A DNA stretch of 63,668 bases, filler included, from Intoshia linei (Eukaryota > Animalia > Orthonectida), in assembly GCA_001642005.1 (NCBI GenBank). It is 5 parts of 5 records of this genome, joined end to end, with 100 filler letters (N's around TTAATTAATTAA, not from the genome) between each part and the next. Parts side by side here need not be neighbours in the genome. Positions count along the whole stretch, not along the records: positions 31,117 to 60,626 come from LWCA01000382.1; 4 more parts are not named here. One strand, written 5' to 3'. The position numbers and the translations under genes were made by a program. Below are positions 33,713 through 42,318 of this stretch, in pieces. The first letter of the stretch is position 1. Every line of letters begins with the position of its first letter. Below the pieces are notes generated by a model, which worked only from the letters and a program-made list of their open reading frames with translations, did no database searches and was not told the DNA's origin.

Positions 33713-34538
33713 TGCTTTCCATTCGACGATCACAATCCGCCATTATTCGAGATGATTGATCAATGTTGCAAGAATTTACGACAATGGCTTTCGGAGGATA
33801 TAGACAATGTAGTAGTGATCCACTGTAAAGCCGGTAAAGGCAGAACTGGAGTCATAATTTCGGCATACTTGTTATTCACCAACATGTTTCACACGGCCAG
33901 TGACGCTTTAGCATTTTACGACAAAACTAGAACATCTGATCATAAAGTAAATTTCACATTATTTGGCTATAAATATTTAGGGAGTTACAATTCCTAGTCA
34001 ACGTAGATATGTAGAATATTACCATAAAACATTATATTCACCCAAAGATTATTCTTTGATACCAATGTTTATTACAGAAATTATCATTGACCACCCTCCA
34101 TTCGTTGCTTGTAATGAATTTTTAAATTGTAATCATGTATTATTTTAGCTCTTTATATAGTAGTAAGTGAAAGGAACAATATATTATACACCTCTAAAGA
34201 ATATACCATACCTAAGAATACACAAATAACTATTGCACTACCAACTCCACTAAAAGTTGAAGGAGATATAAACTTAGAATTTTATACTAAATCAATCTTA
34301 GTAAAGGTAAAAATTTATAAAATTATAAAACAATGAATAGGGAAAGCTTTGTAATTATTGGTTCAACACCTTTTTCGTAAAAAATGAAAACGATGCAAAT
34401 GTAGTTGTAAACGATTTCTTCTATTTATTAACATACAAAAAAAATGAAATTGACAAAGCTGTCAAAGATAAAGATGAAAAAATTTTCAACAATGAATTTC
34501 AAGTAACTACAAAAATGATTGCAGAATTAGAAGATTGA
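33713..34538 (+). CDS. PTEN: PTEN lipid phosphatase; N-terminal exons not visible
   Basis: FPFDDHNPP, HCKAGKGRTG, GVTIPSQRRYVEYY, C2 domain VEGDINLEF, YWFNTFF, EIDKAVKDK. Confidence 0.93.
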
Positions 34539-34609: not shown

Positions 34610-36006
34610 TTAATCAAATTTTATACATCTAAATTTTCCTAAAAGGTAAACATTGTAAAATAATAAATACTCTTAATTTCGTAATTGTTGTACTCGTCAT
34701 TGCTATCACTTTGTCGCTTCACACTAGGTTGAGTTGTATCCTTAGAATTAACATCGAAAGGTAATTCGTTATTGTCACATGGCATTGGGTTTTTGTTTAA
34801 GAAATTACTATGTAAAACCTTGAAATAATTTTGATTAAGTTAAATTACATCTAAGGAAGTGAATCTTTTTAATGGATTGAGAACTAATAATTTTGTAATA
34901 AAATCAATGCTGTCATCATCCACTGCAGTGAATATTGATTTGAGAGGAACGGGCTGTTGGACATTGAATTTTATAAACGACGAAAAATTAGATGCAAACT
35001 AATTGTATATAAATTTTTAGTGATTAAATTACTGGCCAATTTTCTTCGTCCGGAAGACCAAAAATTTTAACAATTGTCGCCAATTGTTGTATATCCGAAT
35101 CTTCCGAAATTAAAGGAACCTAAAGATTATTTTTCAATCTATGGGTAAGATTACTCTCAAAAATAATTGAGCTATAATACACCCGACGGACCACATATCG
35201 ACGGCCGGACCGTATTTTTTCGCGCCCATTATCAATTCTGGACATCGATACCAACTGACTAGTTTTTTTTATAGAAAAAGTAGCAAATACCGAGTAACAA
35301 CTTGGTTAGTATAAATTCTATCAGGCGAGGCGAAGGTTCGAGCTAGACCAAAATCAGTTATGGTAAGTAAGCCAGTTTTTCTAAGTAAAAGATTGTCTGG
35401 CTTTAAATCCTAAATTTTAAATAAAACTTTACAATATTTTTGATATACCCTGTGGAGTATCCAATTTTTGTGCAAATAGTGTAAACCAGTACACAACTGC
35501 TTGGTATAATTTTTTATGTGGGATAATTTGAATATAATACTGCGGTTCTCAATAATATTCTAGTTATAAGTGTATTAACCAAAAAATAAAAAAATACGAA
35601 TAGATCTGTATCCATATGCTCAAATACCAGACAGATGTTTCCATATTCGCTGTAAACATCGAGTAACTAATTTTGATGATAAACTTGTCACAAAAATGAA
35701 ATAACCTTTATAATATTTTCGTGGTTAAGTTCTCCCAATAATTTAATTTCTCTATAGGCAGTTCGGTTAATACCATACTGAGTTTCATCTCTACTACCTA
35801 CATTAATCTATCTTTGTAAAACAAAAATTCAATGACAAATTTTATTTAAAATTAAACCTTTTTGATGGCAACAATTTGGCCAGTTTCTTTGTTTTTAGCT
35901 TCGTAAACAGTGGCAAACTAAATAAAAATAAATACTAAAAATTTAAAAATTTTCAAACCCGCCCAGAGCCCAAAATATCAAGTTTTGTGTACATTTCGCC
36001 ACTCAT
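34610..36006 (-). CDS. CDK7: Cyclin-dependent kinase 7 (CAK), multi-exon
   Basis: LGSGR|[20 protein letters not shown] (NRTALRE variant), [35 protein letters not shown]. Confidence 0.93.
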
Positions 36007-36161
36007 TTTATATTAAAATAAAAGTAGTATATGGACTTATTATCGTTTAATAGATTGTACAGATAACAAGTGTTTGTTTATATACTTAAAATTTAAAACA
36101 ATTAATTGTGAAATGGTCTATATTTATATTTTTTCAATGATTTCACTTTAACTTTATTTGA
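36007..36161. promoter_or_regulatory. Putative bidirectional promoter between CDK7 and SMIM4
   Basis: Only 155 bp separate the divergent ATGs. Confidence 0.55.
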
Positions 36162-36421
36162 ATGTTTAAATTATTAAATCGAGTAGTCAATTCAGTTCCA
36201 GGTGAAAAATGGATTGGTCCGTATAGATTTTTGCCAATTTTTTTTCTTGTTGGGGCAGGGACAGAGTTTTTAATGATAAAATTCAAAATCAATAATGTAG
36301 ATTTTTGTAACGTACCCATCAGTTTTAGATTCAACTTTATTTAGATACTGTTTATCGCAGGAATGAATTAAGGAAAAAGAAAATTTATTTTGAAAACAAG
36401 TACAAAACGCTTGAAACGTAA
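36162..36421 (+). CDS. SMIM4: SMIM4/UQCC5 (sloth1) complex III assembly micropeptide, 73 aa; intron 36307-36344
   Basis: VPGEKWIGPYRFLPIFFLVGAGTEFLMIK..F|YTVYRR resembles SMIM4 VPGKQRFGIYRFLPFFFVLGGTMEWIMIK..FYDVYRR. Confidence 0.9.
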
Positions 36422-36429
36422 CTAATATC

Positions 36430-36618
36430 ATGAATATCGTAAATAAATTCTTTTTTTACTCTTCCTCTTTATTATTGACCATCACTGGTACTCAATGGGT
36501 TCACATGAAATATTTGCCTTTGAAAGTAGAAATTTAAAATCAAAACTATCATTTTATTTAGGGATTAGAAGATGAAATTGATGAATTAGAAAAGGAAATT
36601 AAACGAAAATATGCTTGA
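36430..36618 (+). CDS. UQCC6: BRAWNIN/C12orf73/UQCC6 (sloth2)-like micropeptide, 50 aa; intron 36526-36561; absent from the ORF track
   Basis: MNIVNKFFFYSSSLLLTITGTQWVHMKYLPLK|GLEDEIDELEKEIKRKYA*; single TM plus G.Q.VH..Y.PL..L motif of the family; clean 36 bp GT-AG intron; position directly after SMIM4. Confidence 0.75.
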
Positions 36619-36691
36619 GACACATAGTTTGTATAATAAACTTTATTGTTGTCCAATGATGCATAGAATTTATGATGAGATTTAGTTTTGT

Positions 36692-37285
36692 ATGTCTATG
36701 ATCACTTTTCTGATTTATATATCACTGCTCGGCATAAATGGTAATTCAGTGTATATGAGTCCTTATATTTATTAGATCACTATGTACGATCCATTCGATG
36801 TTATGAGTGCAATATATACCAGGGTAATGATGTGTCAATCGAATTTATATTTTTATAGGAAACTACCGTGTTTCTTGCGTTTACCCAAATTACACTAAAT
36901 CTGTCGTCTGGGGCTGTAAAGCTTGTATGCAAATTGTAGCTTATACGAAAACTCATTATCATAATGGACGATCATCAGGTGGATTTTATATTGGGCCGGC
37001 ATTAACTACTATGCAGATATTTCATTTTCAATATACTTTGTGACAAAAAATGTTGCTAAACGCTGTTATATGAAATTTAATTTAGTATCAATGGCGGAAA
37101 GTCGCACTTGTGTTGTACCTAGATATTATAAACAAAAAATTATGCAAAATCAATGCCACACAAAAAACAAGGGATCTTCAAAGGTCACAATTTGTTACTG
37201 CACTGGACAAGATTTTTGCACATCTGCATCATTTAAAATTTATTCGTTTTTAAATTTTCTAATTTTATTAATTTTGCAAGTTTAA
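36692..37285 (+). CDS. Ly6/uPAR three-finger (quiver/sleepless-like) GPI-anchored protein, 4 exons
   Basis: Signal peptide MSMITFLIYISLLG, IRCYECN, CKACMQ, KRC, ICYCTGQDFCTS and a hydrophobic tail. Confidence 0.7.
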
Positions 37286-37567
37286 AATAAATTGTACAGT
37301 TGAAAAACCAAATATACACAGTATTCTGTCTACTTTGCTAATGTTTCGATCCCCACTTGTAATGGTACATTTTCACTAAATAGATAAACGTTAACCAGAG
37401 ACGTCATATATTACTACAGTCGGACCTCGGATTGGGGCACCATTTTTTGAAAAGTGTCCAAAATCAGGGGTTATAGTAAGTTATCTAATTTTTCATTGAA
37501 TATTTAAACTATTGCAATACATTATGATAATATACTTGTTTCGATTAGAGTCCAACACTGTATAGGG

Positions 37568-39240
37568 CAGGGGTCATCATAGGGGGTTGATTTGATTAAA
37601 GCTAATTAAATTTTATTAAAAAATACATTTAAATTTTAAATGTAATTTGAACTTGTAAAATAAAATATTCTATTATGCAATATCACCAACGAAATATATG
37701 AGTAGTAAATAATGAATAAATTGTGTTAACGTATACTTGTCAATTTTTTATTGTATAAATAAAGACACAAATTTTTTTTTGTGAATTTATTTGAATTGAT
37801 TAAAAGTTATTCTTATGTCATCTGCAAAAAAAATTTCGCCAATATTCTCAACAATATTTGAATATGGTATTCACACCCTCACCATCTAATCCAATTAATC
37901 CAATGTGCTTATTATGCAAAAAAATATTTAGCAGTGATGCTATGAAGCCTTCAAGATGAATGATCACTTGCATCGAATCCATCCAGATAAATGTTAATAA
38001 AATGCTGATTATTTCAAAATATTAAAAACGGAGTATGAAACTTTAAACAAAATTCCAAATTTTTTAAAACCTTGCATAGTTACAAAACCAATTTGTGGAT
38101 TAAAAGCGTCCTACAATATGTCTTTACTAGCTGGACTGTTATGTACTATTTATAAACAGCACCTAGCTCTGCCAAGGGGAGGGCAAAAATCGCGTAGCCT
38201 TTTATATAAGTTAGGATTATATCTTTATTAATTGCTAAAAATGGTGAACCTAATAATATTGCTGAAAATTTAATATTACCTGCTTTAAAAGAAGTTCCCA
38301 ATGTTATGAAACAAAATTCAGATCAAGTTCTGAAGCACTTTACGTTAAGTTCTTCAACTGTTAAGAGACGTATGGACCAAACGGCTGATAATGTTGAAAA
38401 AATTTTAATAAACGAATTAAAAAGTTTCAAATTTTCTTTTCAACTGGATGAATCTATTTTTAGATGTGAGAATATATTGATGTCATATGTAAGGTACTTC
38501 AGTAAGTCCAAACAACAAATAATCGATAAATTTTTACTTGCAAAATACTTAACTAGTGATTCAAGGGGAATAACGATATTTAATACTGCTGAACAATATT
38601 TTATTATGAATGAAATACCCCTTGAAAACATATTTACAGTTGCGACAGATGGTGCTCTGTCAATGGTTGGACGGTACAGTGGGTTTGCTTCATTATTGGA
38701 ATAAAAAACTCCAAAGTTTGCTCAATTCATTGTGTGATACATAGAAATCACCTTGTAGCTAAAAATTTAAGTAGGACATTGAAAATAAATATTTTCGTAA
38801 AAGTAAAAGTTATTAACAAAATTAAAAGCAAACCACTAAACAGTAGATTATTTTCTCTGTTGTATAAAGAAAACGATAAACAATACACTAATTTACTTGT
38901 ACACACAGATGTAAGATGGTTGTCCAAGGGATATTCTCTATGGAGGCTTGTTGAATTATTCCACTCACTGTAACTTTTCTAGAAATATATGAACTTTCCC
39001 TCTGTGAATCATTAATTAATAATACACACAATTTATATTATCTGTCTGATTTGTATGCAAAATTTAATGTCATACAAAAAAAGGCTTTAAGGAAAAAATG
39101 CAACAATTTTAGAATGTCGAACTATTCTTATGGGTTTTAAAATAAGTTTGGTATGAATGTTGTCGATGCTCAACAGAAAAAATTATCAGTATTTTTCTCG
39201 GTTATTGTCAATACAAGATGAGATATTATAATAGATATAA
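37568..39240 (+). mobile_element. Decayed hAT Buster (ZBED5/SCAND3-like) transposon, 3'-truncated
   Basis: CAGGGGTC terminus; BED finger PMCLLC..AMKPS; FQLDES, ATDGA, HCVIHR, HTDVRWLSKG. Confidence 0.85.
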
Positions 39241-39940
39241 TGAGATATATACAAGAGAACAAGACCATCAGTAAATCTGACTGGTTAGATCGTTATTAAA
39301 ATCTTAAAACCCCAGAACCTCGACATTGTCAGTCAATTAATAAGTTCTTAGATTACATATTAACCACATACGCTTTTGAACATCTGGAGACATTTCACAT
39401 AGTGAGTAAATACTGAATACTAATACATTGAATGGATGTATTATAATTTATAAACAATGTAAGAGGTGCTTTCCATCCCGTCGATGATATTCATTAGACT
39501 TGTGTACACAGTGTTTGGAATGTATGTAATGTCATTGACGTACCATTTAGAATTATAGAAAAAGGACGGTGGATTGAAGGTTTTTACCAAAATTATTTGT
39601 AAATATAATAAAAGCATATATTTAAAATTGTTTTATTTCGAAAGCTTCACATTCACAAACCGACTGTATTTTTAAATTTAAAACTATTAAAGACAGAAAC
39701 AAGATATTATTTTTATCGCATTTCTCATACCGTACGGTCCTGTATTTTTTTAATTTCTAAAATTTGAACAAAAAGTTAATACACTAGTATATATTTATTT
39801 TATACATTAAATATATATTTTTTTGTGCATTGCAGGGATTAAATAATATTTAATTAAGAATATTTTAAAAAATGGAATTTTGCAATCCGTAGGTTTTAAA
39901 CGTAATAATATTAAGAATTTAAATATAAATATTTATACAG

Positions 39941-41180
39941 GTGTTATTTTATTTATTTTTTGCGTAAAATGTCGAAAATAGGTAGCTGTCTGATTTTGGT
40001 GTCCTTTGTAAGATTTTATAAAACTACTTTATATAAATTACATATATATATATATTTTATAGAATAATTTTAGACAATTATATCAGTATCAAATATGATA
40101 ATATTATACACGGGTTTGTTGGAATATAATACTGATTTTTTGGAAAGAAACCCATCCATTTTCGTCAAATTTAGCAATCACATAAACCACATTTCTCAGA
40201 AATTCAATATTCATTTCATTATTGTATTATCCATCTTTATTACGTTTGTAGCAACAATGAGTGTTTTGGCTATTTTATCAGAATATCAGCTTTTTACCAA
40301 AATTGTAAAATTTTATTTACTTATTTTTAATATGATTTCTTATGCATGTTTCCGTCCGTTTAAAGTTTAGGGTCAATTGACAATTTTAAATCCACTTTTT
40401 ACGAACCATTACAGAAAAAATAACTTTAGTAATAATCCCTATACATAAAATACGAGATAAAAATTTTTTAACTATCGAAAAGTCAATTCATAATCAGGTT
40501 CGTATTCTCAAATTGTCTGAAATAACAAAAGGCCATAAATAGTAAATGGACGGTTACACATAAAATGTATTTTAGGTTTTACTGTGGACATTAGCATTGT
40601 TCATAATCTATATTTTCGTGTTGGTTTTGCTCTTTATTCCACAGGTATGCTTAATTTGTTAATTAGTTTAGTTTTAAAATATTTATGAATACATTAAGTA
40701 TGTTTGAAATGAGATCAGATGCTGTAAATGGGAAATAGTGTACCAAATAACTTTGAATACAAAGTAGTATGGGTGGAACCTCTCGTATCCATAAAATTTA
40801 CACTGAGATTTAAATTACATAAATTTAGAAATATTGATCTTGGTCAGTATTTTTGAGTTTGGTATGCGTCAATAATTATTAATATTATTAATATATTAAA
40901 TTTTAGAACAATGAAAATTATTATAAATCAGTAACTCATAAGTTTATTGTCAACAAAGTTTATTCAAAAGCAGGAGAAATGAACGAATTGAAATCAAAAG
41001 TACGTATAATTTATAAAATTGAAAAAATATCATTTTGAACATTATTTTTAGAGCAAATGCTACTTTGTAGAAAAAGTGAATTCTTGTTATAATTTTCTGT
41101 ATAACAAAATGTATAATGCATTATTTATATCTTATATTGCATTGCATACATCTTGTTTGGTATATTTTACATCATTATAA
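39941..41180 (+). CDS. Divergent multi-exon membrane protein (tetraspanin-like topology); boundaries approximate
   Basis: GT-AG exons encoding FIIVLSIFITFVATMSVLAILSEYQ, VLLWTLALFIIYIFVLVLLFIPQ, a polar loop with 2 Cys, then ALFISYIALHTSCLVYF. Confidence 0.4.
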
Positions 41181-41583: not shown

Positions 41584-42318
41584 CATGGGTGGCTAAAAGT
41601 CGTTTCACAAAAGGTAAATAATAAAAAATTTAAATTTAAAATAATACAGCTTTTATTTAATATCGTACATTAATAATCCAAAACAAAAGCATGAAAAGAA
41701 TTACATTTTATCTTCAAAGCATTCAAAGTTAACGTGGCCATTCAACTTAAAATTAGCTTCCTTGGTCCAAATTATTCTATTCCTGATTTCAATGTTCTCA
41801 TGGAGTTGTTGCTGTAACCATTTACAAAATTCTATGCATCTATCATAATCGTCATCATTCATTTTATAAAGCAAGCGAGGTCGCCAAACTTTCAAATCAA
41901 TGTTCTTCATTATTTTACGTAGATTTGTGCGTGGTATATACAACTGCAAACTTGCACGAACTGCGGATGTTGATGGCGCATTCTGATAAAAAGCTCTAAC
42001 ATTTTCCTTATTTTCATTGGTATTCATATTTTTTGGGCGTCCACTTCTTTTCTTATCGATAACCGAACCAGTATTGTGAAATTTTTTAGCCAAAGCATAC
42101 ATTGATTGTCGTGATCGAGGAATCTTATTAGGATGCTCTTGTGCAAACGCTGCAGTTGTAGTTGTTGGATTTTTACCATGCATTAATCACTGCTCTACTA
42201 TGAAAATTCGTTGGCGAAGAGTTAATTGTCATCTCATGCTAATATCGATAACAACAATAATTTGAAATTTTGTCCTTGTTATTATTAACCTTTTGTAAAG
42301 CGACTTATGGCTACCCTA
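41584..42318 (-). mobile_element. Internally deleted mariner/Tc1-like element
   Basis: ~40 bp TIRs (gggtggctaaaagtcgtttcacaaaagg / ccttttgtaaagcgacttatggctaccc), TA flanks; ORF with KFHNTGSV..RSGRPK and WTKEANFKLNGHVN. Confidence 0.85.

What the first reader, a model, noticed from the sequence alone, without database searches (positions are those of the whole stretch)
36162..36640. Hidden SMIM4-BRAWNIN (sloth1-sloth2-type) bicistronic micropeptide locus
Seen: the SMIM4 stop ends at 36421 and a second ATG follows at 36430 after only 8 nt. It opens a spliced 50-aa single-TM ORF (..LLLTITGTQWVHMKYLPLK|GLEDEIDELEKE..) missed by the ORF track, with AATAAA at 36635. Known: SMIM4/UQCC5 and C12orf73/BRAWNIN/UQCC6 are complex III assembly peptides encoded bicistronically in Drosophila (sloth1/sloth2) but unlinked in mammals. 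Inference: the ancestral bicistron survives here. Eight nt leaves no room for a promoter, so reinitiation or leaky scanning is implied. This BRAWNIN lacks the usual MPAGV N-terminus.
Basis: partly seen in the sequence, partly recalled or inferred. Interest (0 to 1): 0.8.

Follow-up and report, generated by a model that had tools for sequence, protein, structure and literature searches.

The report
Two-in-one complex III assembly microprotein gene
In the tiny parasitic worm Intoshia linei, two very small mitochondrial proteins that help build respiratory complex III lie 8 bases apart on one strand, as in the fruit fly, so this is a sound but expected new example of a known arrangement.

Summary
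The piece is contig LWCA01000382.1 of the orthonectid Intoshia linei.

- **ORF1** (36162-36306 + 36345-36421, 38-nt intron) is a clear SMIM4/UQCC5 (Pfam PF15114, E 2.6e-15 on exon 1).
- **ORF2** starts 8 nt after the ORF1 stop, in another frame (36430-36525 + 36562-36618, 36-nt intron). It equals the public 50-aa 'hypothetical protein A3Q56_03431'.

ORF2 is very probably BRAWNIN/UQCC6:
- Its only Pfam hit is PF14990 (E 0.011, below the family cut-off).
- The three nearest ESM-Atlas clusters are all PF14990/UQCC6.
- It keeps the core G-x-Q-x-V-H-x-x-Y-x-P-L.
- Both cistrons keep their introns at the position and phase seen in fly and lamprey.

What is missing from the public gene set is ORF1, not ORF2.

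The architecture is already published for Drosophila (5-nt spacer), a choanoflagellate, a sea squirt and lamprey (Bosch et al. 2022). This is therefore a new member of a known kind. It extends the tight bicistron to a fast-evolving spiralian.

No RNA data were within reach, so a single transcript and the way ORF2 is translated remain inferred. Four AUGs lie between the two starts. That argues against simple leaky scanning and for reinitiation.

The parts
36007..36161 (+). 155-nt gap between the start of the divergent kinase gene (minus strand, 34639-36006) and the ORF1 ATG. It is the presumed promoter and 5' UTR. It holds possible upstream AUGs at 36031, 36113 and 36137 (ORFs of 11, 12 and 4 codons).
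   Evidence: Gene table; ATG list. The transcription start is unknown, so this part is inferred.
36162..36306 (+). ORF1 (SMIM4/UQCC5, sloth1 type) exon 1: 48 codons plus the first base of a Tyr codon. The ATG context tttgaATGt is weak (T at -3, T at +4).
   Evidence: Pfam PF15114 at E 2.6e-15, 56.5 bits against a cut-off of 27, residues 4-48 on profile 5-49/67. Translation; context.
36307..36344 (+). Intron 1: 38 nt, GT..AG, phase 1, inside the Tyr codon after ..DF.
   Evidence: Sequence. The position and phase match fly sloth1 (..NF|Y) and lamprey (..TF|Y) in Supplementary file 1 of Bosch et al. 2022.
36345..36421 (+). ORF1 exon 2: completes Tyr, then TVYRRNELRKKKIYFENKYKTLET and stop TAA at 36419-36421. 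The tail is basic (8 K/R, 3 D/E).
   Evidence: The junction reads F-Y-T-V-Y-R-R-N, against sea squirt F-Y-D-V-W-R-R-N and lamprey F-Y-D-V-Y-R-R-K. Alone, exon 2 has no Pfam hit.
36422..36429 (+). Intercistronic spacer CTAATATC, 8 nt. It contains no AG dinucleotide.
   Evidence: The fly spacer is 5 nt, GCAAA.
36430..36525 (+). ORF2 (BRAWNIN/UQCC6, sloth2 type) exon 1: 32 codons, in a different frame from ORF1. The ATG context atatcATGa has A at -3. The frame is closed upstream by TGA at 36412-36414.
   Evidence: Translation. Pfam PF14990 is the only hit, E 0.053 for exon 1 alone..
36526..36561 (+). Intron 2: 36 nt, GT..AG, phase 0, after ..VHMKYLPLK.
   Evidence: The public gene model uses this intron. 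Lamprey sloth2 has a phase-0 intron after ..VHRYYRPDL, the homologous codon given the ungapped +4 offset of the Pfam alignment.
36562..36618 (+). ORF2 exon 2: GLEDEIDELEKEIKRKYA and stop TGA at 36616-36618. The tail is acidic (7 D/E, 4 K/R).
   Evidence: With exon 2 included (P0001) the PF14990 alignment extends to profile position 43/46 and the score rises from 13.6 to 15.8 bits.
36635..36640 (+). AATAAA 17 nt after the ORF2 stop: a candidate polyadenylation signal for the bicistronic mRNA.
   Evidence: This is weak evidence, because the hexamer occurs 2.6 times per kb on this strand.
36442..36447 (+). AATAAA inside ORF2, 21 nt after the ORF1 stop: a possible alternative 3' end for an ORF1-only mRNA.
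   Evidence: It is expected by chance at this base composition. Its use is untested.

Best explanation
This is the Intoshia linei (Orthonectida) version of the sloth1-sloth2 gene. It has two small cistrons on one strand. The first encodes a 73-codon SMIM4/UQCC5. The second, 8 nt later and in another frame, encodes a 50-aa BRAWNIN/UQCC6.

By analogy with human and fly, both products are single-pass proteins of the mitochondrial inner membrane. There they bind newly made cytochrome b together with UQCC1 and UQCC2 and promote an early step of complex III assembly. One mRNA would keep the two in a fixed ratio.

Shown here:
- the identity of ORF1;
- family-specific similarity of ORF2;
- conserved intron positions in both cistrons;
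- the order, strand and 8-nt spacing.

Inferred:
- one transcript, running from a promoter in the 155-nt gap shared with the divergent kinase gene to the AATAAA at 36635;
- translation of ORF2 by ribosomes that either pass the weak ORF1 AUG and reinitiate after the very short out-of-frame ORFs, or reinitiate 8 nt after terminating ORF1;
- the mitochondrial function.

My odds are 0.97 that ORF1 is UQCC5, about 0.9 that ORF2 is UQCC6, and about 0.75-0.8 that both sit on one mRNA.
For: - **Organism and contig.** GCA_001642005.1 LWCA01000382.1. P0001 is named 'hypothetical protein A3Q56_03431 [Intoshia linei]'.
- **ORF1.** PF15114 at E 2.6e-15, above the cut-off.
- **ORF2 against Pfam.** P0001 hits only PF14990 out of 24,736 Pfam models: E 0.011, residues 8-39 on profile 12-43/46, ungapped. 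None of 58 other ORFs of 32-60 aa from the same contig hits PF14990.
- **ORF2 against the ESM Atlas.** The three nearest clusters are all PF14990/UQCC6 (0.90, 0.89, 0.89; 184-186 shared features). Seven of the ten best hits that carry a family share one.
- **Core motif.** ORF2 reads SLL...G-T-Q-W-V-H-M-K-Y-L-P-L. Fly reads G-S-Q-A-V-H-L-Y-Y-K-P-L and lamprey SLL...G-A-E-V-V-H-R-Y-Y-R-P-D-L.
- **Introns.** The ORF1 intron is phase 1 in the same Tyr codon as in fly and lamprey. The ORF2 intron is phase 0 at the lamprey position.
- **Published architecture.** Fly, choanoflagellate, sea squirt and lamprey have it; the fly spacer is 5 nt.
- **AUG contexts.** ORF1's is weak and ORF2's has A at -3, as in fly.
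- **Out-of-frame AUGs in between.** They open ORFs of only 5, 1 and 2 codons.
- **The client exists.** The I. linei mitochondrial genome carries cob.
- **Function of the human pair.** PMC8719881.
Against: - The PF14990 score of 15.8 bits is below Pfam's cut-off of 27. Chance hits at E 0.03-0.15 to unrelated families were common among the control ORFs.
- phmmer of P0001 against 1.84 billion proteins found no small relative at E 0.001 or better, only repeat artefacts.
- ORF2 lacks the MPAGV start.
- ORF2's hydrophobic stretch is only moderately hydrophobic (Kyte-Doolittle mean 1.21 over 15 residues, against 1.77 for ORF1).
- No transcript contig carries the locus, so the bicistronic mRNA is unproven.
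- An AATAAA sits 21 nt after the ORF1 stop.
- Four AUGs, one in a strong context (36209; A at -3, G at +4), lie between the two starts. This would hamper simple leaky scanning.
Confidence: 0.75

Rival explanations
1. Both genes are real, but each has its own mRNA. The ORF1 message would end after the AATAAA at 36442. ORF2 would be transcribed from a start inside the ORF1 coding region or intron.
For: AATAAA at 36442-36447 lies 21 nt after the ORF1 stop. The public annotation models ORF2 as a separate gene. The paper's Figure 1C legend allows 'adjacent separate transcripts' for some species.
Against: An 8-nt spacer leaves no intergenic room, so the promoter would have to lie inside ORF1. AATAAA is expected by chance at 2.6 per kb. 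The fly locus with a 5-nt spacer is proven bicistronic.
Confidence: 0.14
2. ORF2 is a chance open frame in AT-rich 3' UTR that an ab initio gene finder turned into a model. Only SMIM4 is a real gene here.
For: - The Pfam hit is below the cut-off, and weak chance hits are frequent in control ORFs.
- There is no relative in 1.84 billion proteins.
- By the tool's own figures, an Atlas score of 0.90 is reached by 4-10% of shuffled proteins.
- ORFs of 32-60 aa are common in this contig.
Against: A chance frame would have to meet five conditions at once:
- hit the one family that partners SMIM4, out of 24,736;
- give the same family by the language-model route with 184-186 shared features;
- keep the G-x-Q-x-V-H-x-x-Y-x-P-L motif;
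- carry a GT..AG intron at the lamprey position and phase;
- start 8 nt after the SMIM4 stop, as in fly.
Confidence: 0.07
3. The pair is an operon, and its pre-mRNA is cut into two capped mRNAs by spliced-leader trans-splicing.
For: Some compact animal genomes use operons with trans-splicing (reviewed in PMC7854359).
Against: The spacer has no AG acceptor, and the nearest AG upstream is at 36399, inside ORF1. No spliced-leader RNA or other Rfam family was found in the contig. I found no report of trans-splicing in orthonectids.
Confidence: 0.03

Closest known systems
Drosophila sloth1-sloth2 (CG32736-CG42308) bicistronic gene, Bosch et al. 2022, eLife 11:e82709
   Same: - The order is SMIM4-type then BRAWNIN-type, on one strand.
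- The spacer is tiny (5 nt against 8 nt), and the two ORFs are in different frames.
- A phase-1 intron sits in the same Tyr codon of cistron 1.
- The first AUG has a weak context and the second a better one.
- The core motifs of both peptides are shared.
   Different: - The Intoshia cistron 2 has an intron; fly has none.
- It lacks the MPAGV start and is shorter (50 aa against 61 aa).
- Four AUGs lie between the two starts, whereas I count one, in frame, in the fly sequence of the supplement.
- The transcript and translation are proven in fly and untested here.
Linked sloth1-sloth2 loci of lamprey, sea squirt and the choanoflagellate Salpingoeca urceolata (same paper, Supplementary file 1)
   Same: The gene order and strand are the same. 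Lamprey shares both intron positions and phases with Intoshia.
   Different: By my count in the supplement, their spacers are roughly 100-330 nt, not 8 nt. Their BRAWNIN-type peptides start MP(A/F/Y)GV.
Human SMIM4 (UQCC5) and C12orf73/BRAWNIN (UQCC6)
   Same: They belong to the same two Pfam families (PF15114, PF14990). They are small single-pass inner-membrane proteins that depend on each other and bind new cytochrome b with UQCC1 and UQCC2 (PMC8719881).
   Different: In human the genes are on chromosomes 3 and 12. The function in Intoshia is inferred only.

Membership tests
SMIM4/UQCC5 (Pfam PF15114, UPF0640) | Profile match above Pfam's gathering score | tested here: met
   Exon 1 alone scores 56.5 bits against a cut-off of 27, E 2.6e-15, on profile 5-49/67.
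SMIM4/UQCC5 (Pfam PF15114, UPF0640) | Conserved phase-1 intron in the Tyr codon of the F-Y-x-x-[YWF]-[RK]-R motif | tested here: met
   Intoshia DF|Y-TVYRRN against fly NF|Y-RTFKRR and lamprey TF|Y-DVYRRK. This was read by eye from the paper's supplement. The joined 73-aa product was not searched.
SMIM4/UQCC5 (Pfam PF15114, UPF0640) | Inner-membrane location and a role in complex III assembly | not testable with these tools
   Only a hydrophobic stretch FLPIFFLVGAGTEFL (Kyte-Doolittle mean 1.77) and the presence of mitochondrial cob in I. linei.
BRAWNIN/UQCC6 (Pfam PF14990, DUF4516) | Profile match above Pfam's gathering score | tested here: not met
   15.8 bits against a cut-off of 27. It is still the only family hit, at E 0.011, ungapped over 32 of 46 profile positions. 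0 of 58 control ORFs hit it.
BRAWNIN/UQCC6 (Pfam PF14990, DUF4516) | Independent similarity measure pointing to the same family | tested here: met
   The top three ESM-Atlas clusters are PF14990/UQCC6 at 0.89-0.90, with 184-186 of 256 features shared.
BRAWNIN/UQCC6 (Pfam PF14990, DUF4516) | Core motif G-x-[QE]-x-V-H-x-x-Y-x-P at the end of the membrane segment | tested here: met
   ORF2 has GTQWVHMKYLP, against fly GSQAVHLYYKP and lamprey GAEVVHRYYRP.
BRAWNIN/UQCC6 (Pfam PF14990, DUF4516) | N-terminal M-P-x-G-V start | tested here: not met
   ORF2 starts MNIVNKF. Its frame is closed 5 codons upstream, and no MP start exists in any + frame between 35900 and 36640.
BRAWNIN/UQCC6 (Pfam PF14990, DUF4516) | Significant pairwise similarity to individual family members | tested here: not met
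   phmmer against 1.84 billion representatives gave no small protein at E 0.001 or better. The nine hits are long repeat proteins that carry a 12-residue motif many times.
sloth1-sloth2-type bicistronic gene | SMIM4-type ORF followed on the same strand by a BRAWNIN-type ORF, with no room for a promoter between them | tested here: met
   8-nt spacer at 36422-36429, with the two ORFs in different frames.
sloth1-sloth2-type bicistronic gene | One mature mRNA carrying both ORFs | not testable with these tools
   P0001 is found only on the genome contig, and no transcript assembly carries it.
sloth1-sloth2-type bicistronic gene | Both ORFs translated, with the first AUG weak enough to let ribosomes reach the second | tested here: inconclusive
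   The ORF1 context is weak (T at -3, T at +4) and ORF2 has A at -3. However, four AUGs lie in between, one of them in a strong context.

The most novel reading that the evidence does not exclude
In Intoshia the second cistron is reached mainly by reinitiation, not by the leaky scanning shown in fly. Reinitiation would follow either termination of the 73-codon ORF1 8 nt upstream, or the 5-, 1- and 2-codon mini-ORFs that every out-of-frame AUG inside ORF1 opens. That would make this locus a natural, minimal model of termination-reinitiation on a cellular animal mRNA. It would also show that the linkage of UQCC5 and UQCC6 is kept by selection for a fixed ratio even in one of the most reduced and fastest-evolving animal genomes.
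Probability: 0.3. Interest if true: 0.45.

Novelty: new member of a known kind. Interest (0 to 1): 0.3.

Why it matters
- **Annotation.** It corrects a public annotation. A3Q56_03431 can be named UQCC6/BRAWNIN-like. An unannotated SMIM4/UQCC5 gene can be added directly upstream of it.
- **Evolution.** It places the tight sloth1-sloth2 arrangement in a spiralian. The published text I read names no spiralian. It also adds shared intron positions as an argument that the linked pair is ancestral for animals.

None of this would surprise a specialist, because the arrangement and its ancient origin are already published.

Tried and rejected
- **Word search with ORF1 exon 1.** No candidate. The SMIM4 product is therefore absent from the public protein set, and no close relative is indexed.
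- **The same search with ORF2 exon 1.** The stop-to-stop frame 36415-36534 (40 aa) then found only P0001.
- **PDB sequence search with either exon 1.** Nothing.
- **BLASTP of ORF1 exon 1 against ORF2 exon 1.** No alignment. The paralogy of the two peptides cannot be shown pairwise here.
- **Big HMMER search with P0001.** Only repeat artefacts, a GTGFVHMGELP motif repeated about 15 times in long kinase-domain proteins.
- **RNA structure.** Folding 36375-36485 shows no special structure (z 0.54), so nothing suggests an IRES or a hairpin.
- **Other RNA genes.** Rfam and tRNA scans of the contig are empty.
- **Accession searches in the papers.** Nothing found. The organism came from the protein's own name.
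- For ORF2 the whole product was searched only as the public protein P0001.

Full report
**1. Where the piece comes from**

An exact look-up of a 160-aa ORF placed the piece on NCBI assembly GCA_001642005.1, contig LWCA01000382.1. The contig is 29,510 bases, and window coordinate = record coordinate + 31116. The 50-aa protein encoded at the finding is named by NCBI 'hypothetical protein A3Q56_03431 [Intoshia linei]'. I. linei is an orthonectid (Spiralia, 'Mesozoa').

The contig has 24-30% G+C. The published median intron length for the species is 57 bp, with many shorter introns (PMC6543705). Introns of 36 and 38 nt fit that range.

**2. The observation**

- ORF1 runs 36162-36306, then a GT..AG intron of 38 nt (36307-36344, phase 1), then 36345-36421 with TAA at 36419-36421.
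- Eight bases (CTAATATC) follow.
- ORF2 runs 36430-36525, then a GT..AG intron of 36 nt (36526-36561, phase 0), then 36562-36618 with TGA at 36616-36618.
- The two ORFs are in different frames. The ORF2 frame is closed by TGA five codons upstream of its ATG, so read-through cannot fuse them.
- AATAAA lies at 36442 and at 36635. This hexamer occurs 2.6 times per kb on this strand, so neither copy means much on its own.

**3. ORF1**

Exon 1 alone matches Pfam PF15114 (UPF0640, the SMIM4 family) at E 2.6e-15, 56.5 bits against a cut-off of 27.

Exon 2 alone is too short to score. Across the splice junction, however, the product reads D-F-Y-T-V-Y-R-R-N. The loci printed in Supplementary file 1 of Bosch et al. 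2022 read, by my translation:
- N-F-Y-R-T-F-K-R-R in fly;
- T-F-Y-D-V-Y-R-R-K in lamprey;
- T-F-Y-D-V-W-R-R-N in sea squirt.

In fly and lamprey the intron splits that same Tyr codon after its first base, as it does here. This shared position and phase is the best evidence for the ORF1 splice model.

**4. ORF2**

The public protein P0001 equals the spliced model exactly. The whole product could therefore be searched without any joining on my part.

*Evidence for membership of the BRAWNIN/UQCC6 family:*

- Against Pfam its only hit is PF14990 (DUF4516, the C12orf73/BRAWNIN/UQCC6 family): E 0.011, 15.8 bits, residues 8-39 on profile positions 12-43 of 46, without a gap. This is below Pfam's cut-off of 27 bits, so formal membership by that criterion is not met.
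- Exon 1 alone gave 13.6 bits on positions 12-35. The alignment therefore continues across the proposed splice site.
- As a control I scanned 58 other ATG ORFs of 32-60 aa from the same contig. None hit PF14990. Single chance hits at E 0.03-0.15 to assorted other families were common, as the E-values predict. The weight of the hit lies in which family it is, namely the known partner of the gene 8 nt upstream.
- A separate method agrees. In the ESM Atlas the three nearest clusters all carry PF14990 (scores 0.90, 0.89 and 0.89; 184-186 shared features); the second is named 'ubiquinol-cytochrome-c reductase complex assembly factor 6 family' and the first 'DUF4516 domain-containing protein'. Seven of the ten best hits that carry a family share one.
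- By eye against the paper's supplement, ORF2 reads S-L-L-L-T-I-T-G-T-Q-W-V-H-M-K-Y-L-P-L-K. Lamprey reads S-L-L-S-M-L-A-G-A-E-V-V-H-R-Y-Y-R-P-D-L. Fly reads G-S-Q-A-V-H-L-Y-Y-K-P-L.
- The lamprey gene has a phase-0 intron directly after ..R-P-D-L, its codon 36. Intoshia has its phase-0 intron after ..L-P-L-K, its codon 32. With the +4 offset of the Pfam alignment these are the same position.

*Evidence against:*

- There is no MPAGV start, and none is available nearby.
- The hydrophobic stretch is only moderately hydrophobic.
- There is no significant pairwise relative. phmmer of P0001 against 1.84 billion representatives returned, besides itself, nine long proteins. The ones I checked (P0002 by pairwise alignment; P0002, P0003, P0005, P0007 and P0009 by Pfam) score by repetition of a short motif and carry kinase or bacterial Ig-like domains, or no clear family. 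I take all nine for artefacts, since all match in two to five separate stretches.

I put the chance that ORF2 is a true UQCC6 orthologue at about 0.9.

**5. Context and annotation**

The public gene table lists, in window coordinates:
- a PTEN-like phosphatase gene (+ strand), ending near 34538;
- a protein kinase gene on the minus strand, 34639-36006;
- the 50-aa gene, 36430-36618;
- a FAM200/ZBED5-like transposase-derived model, 36692-41180.

No gene is listed between 36006 and 36430. The word search with ORF1 exon 1 found nothing in 5.8 billion proteins. The unannotated gene is therefore SMIM4, not BRAWNIN.

Only 155 nt separate the kinase start from the ORF1 ATG, so a shared divergent promoter is likely. 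This is an inference.

**6. How it probably works**

In human cells SMIM4 and C12orf73 depend on each other. They sit in a complex with UQCC1 and UQCC2, bind newly made cytochrome b, and are needed for normal complex III levels (PMC8719881).

In fly both peptides come from one mRNA with a 5-nt spacer. Both are essential and not redundant, and their ratio matters. ORF2 is reached by leaky scanning past a weak sloth1 AUG (PMC9681215).

I. linei has a mitochondrial cob gene, so the client protein exists.

At this locus:
- The ORF1 AUG has a weak context (T at -3, T at +4).
- The ORF2 AUG has A at -3, the same asymmetry as in fly.
- Unlike fly, four AUGs lie between the two starts. They are 36209 (A at -3, G at +4), 36273 (in frame), 36295 and 36363.
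- The three out-of-frame AUGs open ORFs of only 5, 1 and 2 codons. Ribosomes that start there could resume scanning. With about 7.5% stop codons per triplet in this DNA, such short ORFs are only mildly unexpected, and I noticed the pattern after the fact.

I therefore favour a mix of leaky scanning and reinitiation, or reinitiation 8 nt after ORF1 terminates, over pure leaky scanning.

The spacer region shows no unusual RNA structure (z 0.54). It has no AG that could serve as a trans-splice acceptor.

No RNA evidence could be reached, since P0001 is found only on the genome contig. The single transcript therefore remains an inference from the 8-nt spacing and the fly precedent.

**7. Comparison with what is known, and novelty**

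The architecture is published for Drosophila, a choanoflagellate, a sea squirt and lamprey. The authors conclude that the pair arose by an old duplication and became unlinked on the way to jawed vertebrates.

The Intoshia locus is a further member of that kind. The new points are modest:
- a spiralian example with a spacer as tight as in fly;
- both ancestral introns retained at miniature size;
- a divergent BRAWNIN N-terminus;
- a concrete correction of a public annotation.

I rate it a new member of a known kind, interest 0.3.

The contig is not human.

Noticed in passing
window 36692-41180 (+): The public annotation has a 430-aa FAM200/ZBED5 RNase-like (hAT transposase-derived) gene model. 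It starts only 74 nt after the ORF2 stop and 52 nt after the AATAAA at 36635. ORFs at 38306-38704 and 38734-38973 belong to it but have no Pfam hit on their own. Its first exon at 36692 may be a prediction artefact.
   Followed up: partly
window 41704-42183 (-): This 160-aa ORF is annotated as a gene. It has only a DUF4817 helix-turn-helix match (E 3e-05), so it looks like the N-terminal remnant of a transposase.
   Followed up: partly
window 33752-33997 (+): This exon carries the PTEN-type active site HCKAGKGRTG. It is part of an annotated 363-aa PTEN-like gene with a PTEN_C2 domain. Together with a divergent kinase gene (34639-36006, minus strand) it forms the very compact surroundings of the locus.
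   Followed up: partly
proteins P0002, P0003, P0005: These long proteins (828-1325 aa) have a kinase domain. P0002 also has about 15 tandem copies of a motif, GTGFVHMGELP. By repetition the motif scores E 1.6e-10 against the 50-aa query. This shows how summed repeats can fake significance for a microprotein query.
   Followed up: partly
alignment A1 (58 control ORFs of the contig): One control ORF hit Pfam Glyco_tranf_2_5 at E 0.00078, and another hit Clat_adaptor_s at E 0.056. I did not determine which ORFs they were. Either could be an exon of an unannotated or annotated gene.
   Followed up: no
window 36209, 36295, 36363: Every out-of-frame AUG inside ORF1 is followed by a stop within 5, 1 and 2 codons. 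The case at 36295 is ATG directly followed by TAG. This may be chance in AT-rich DNA, or selection that lets ribosomes travel on to ORF2.
   Followed up: partly
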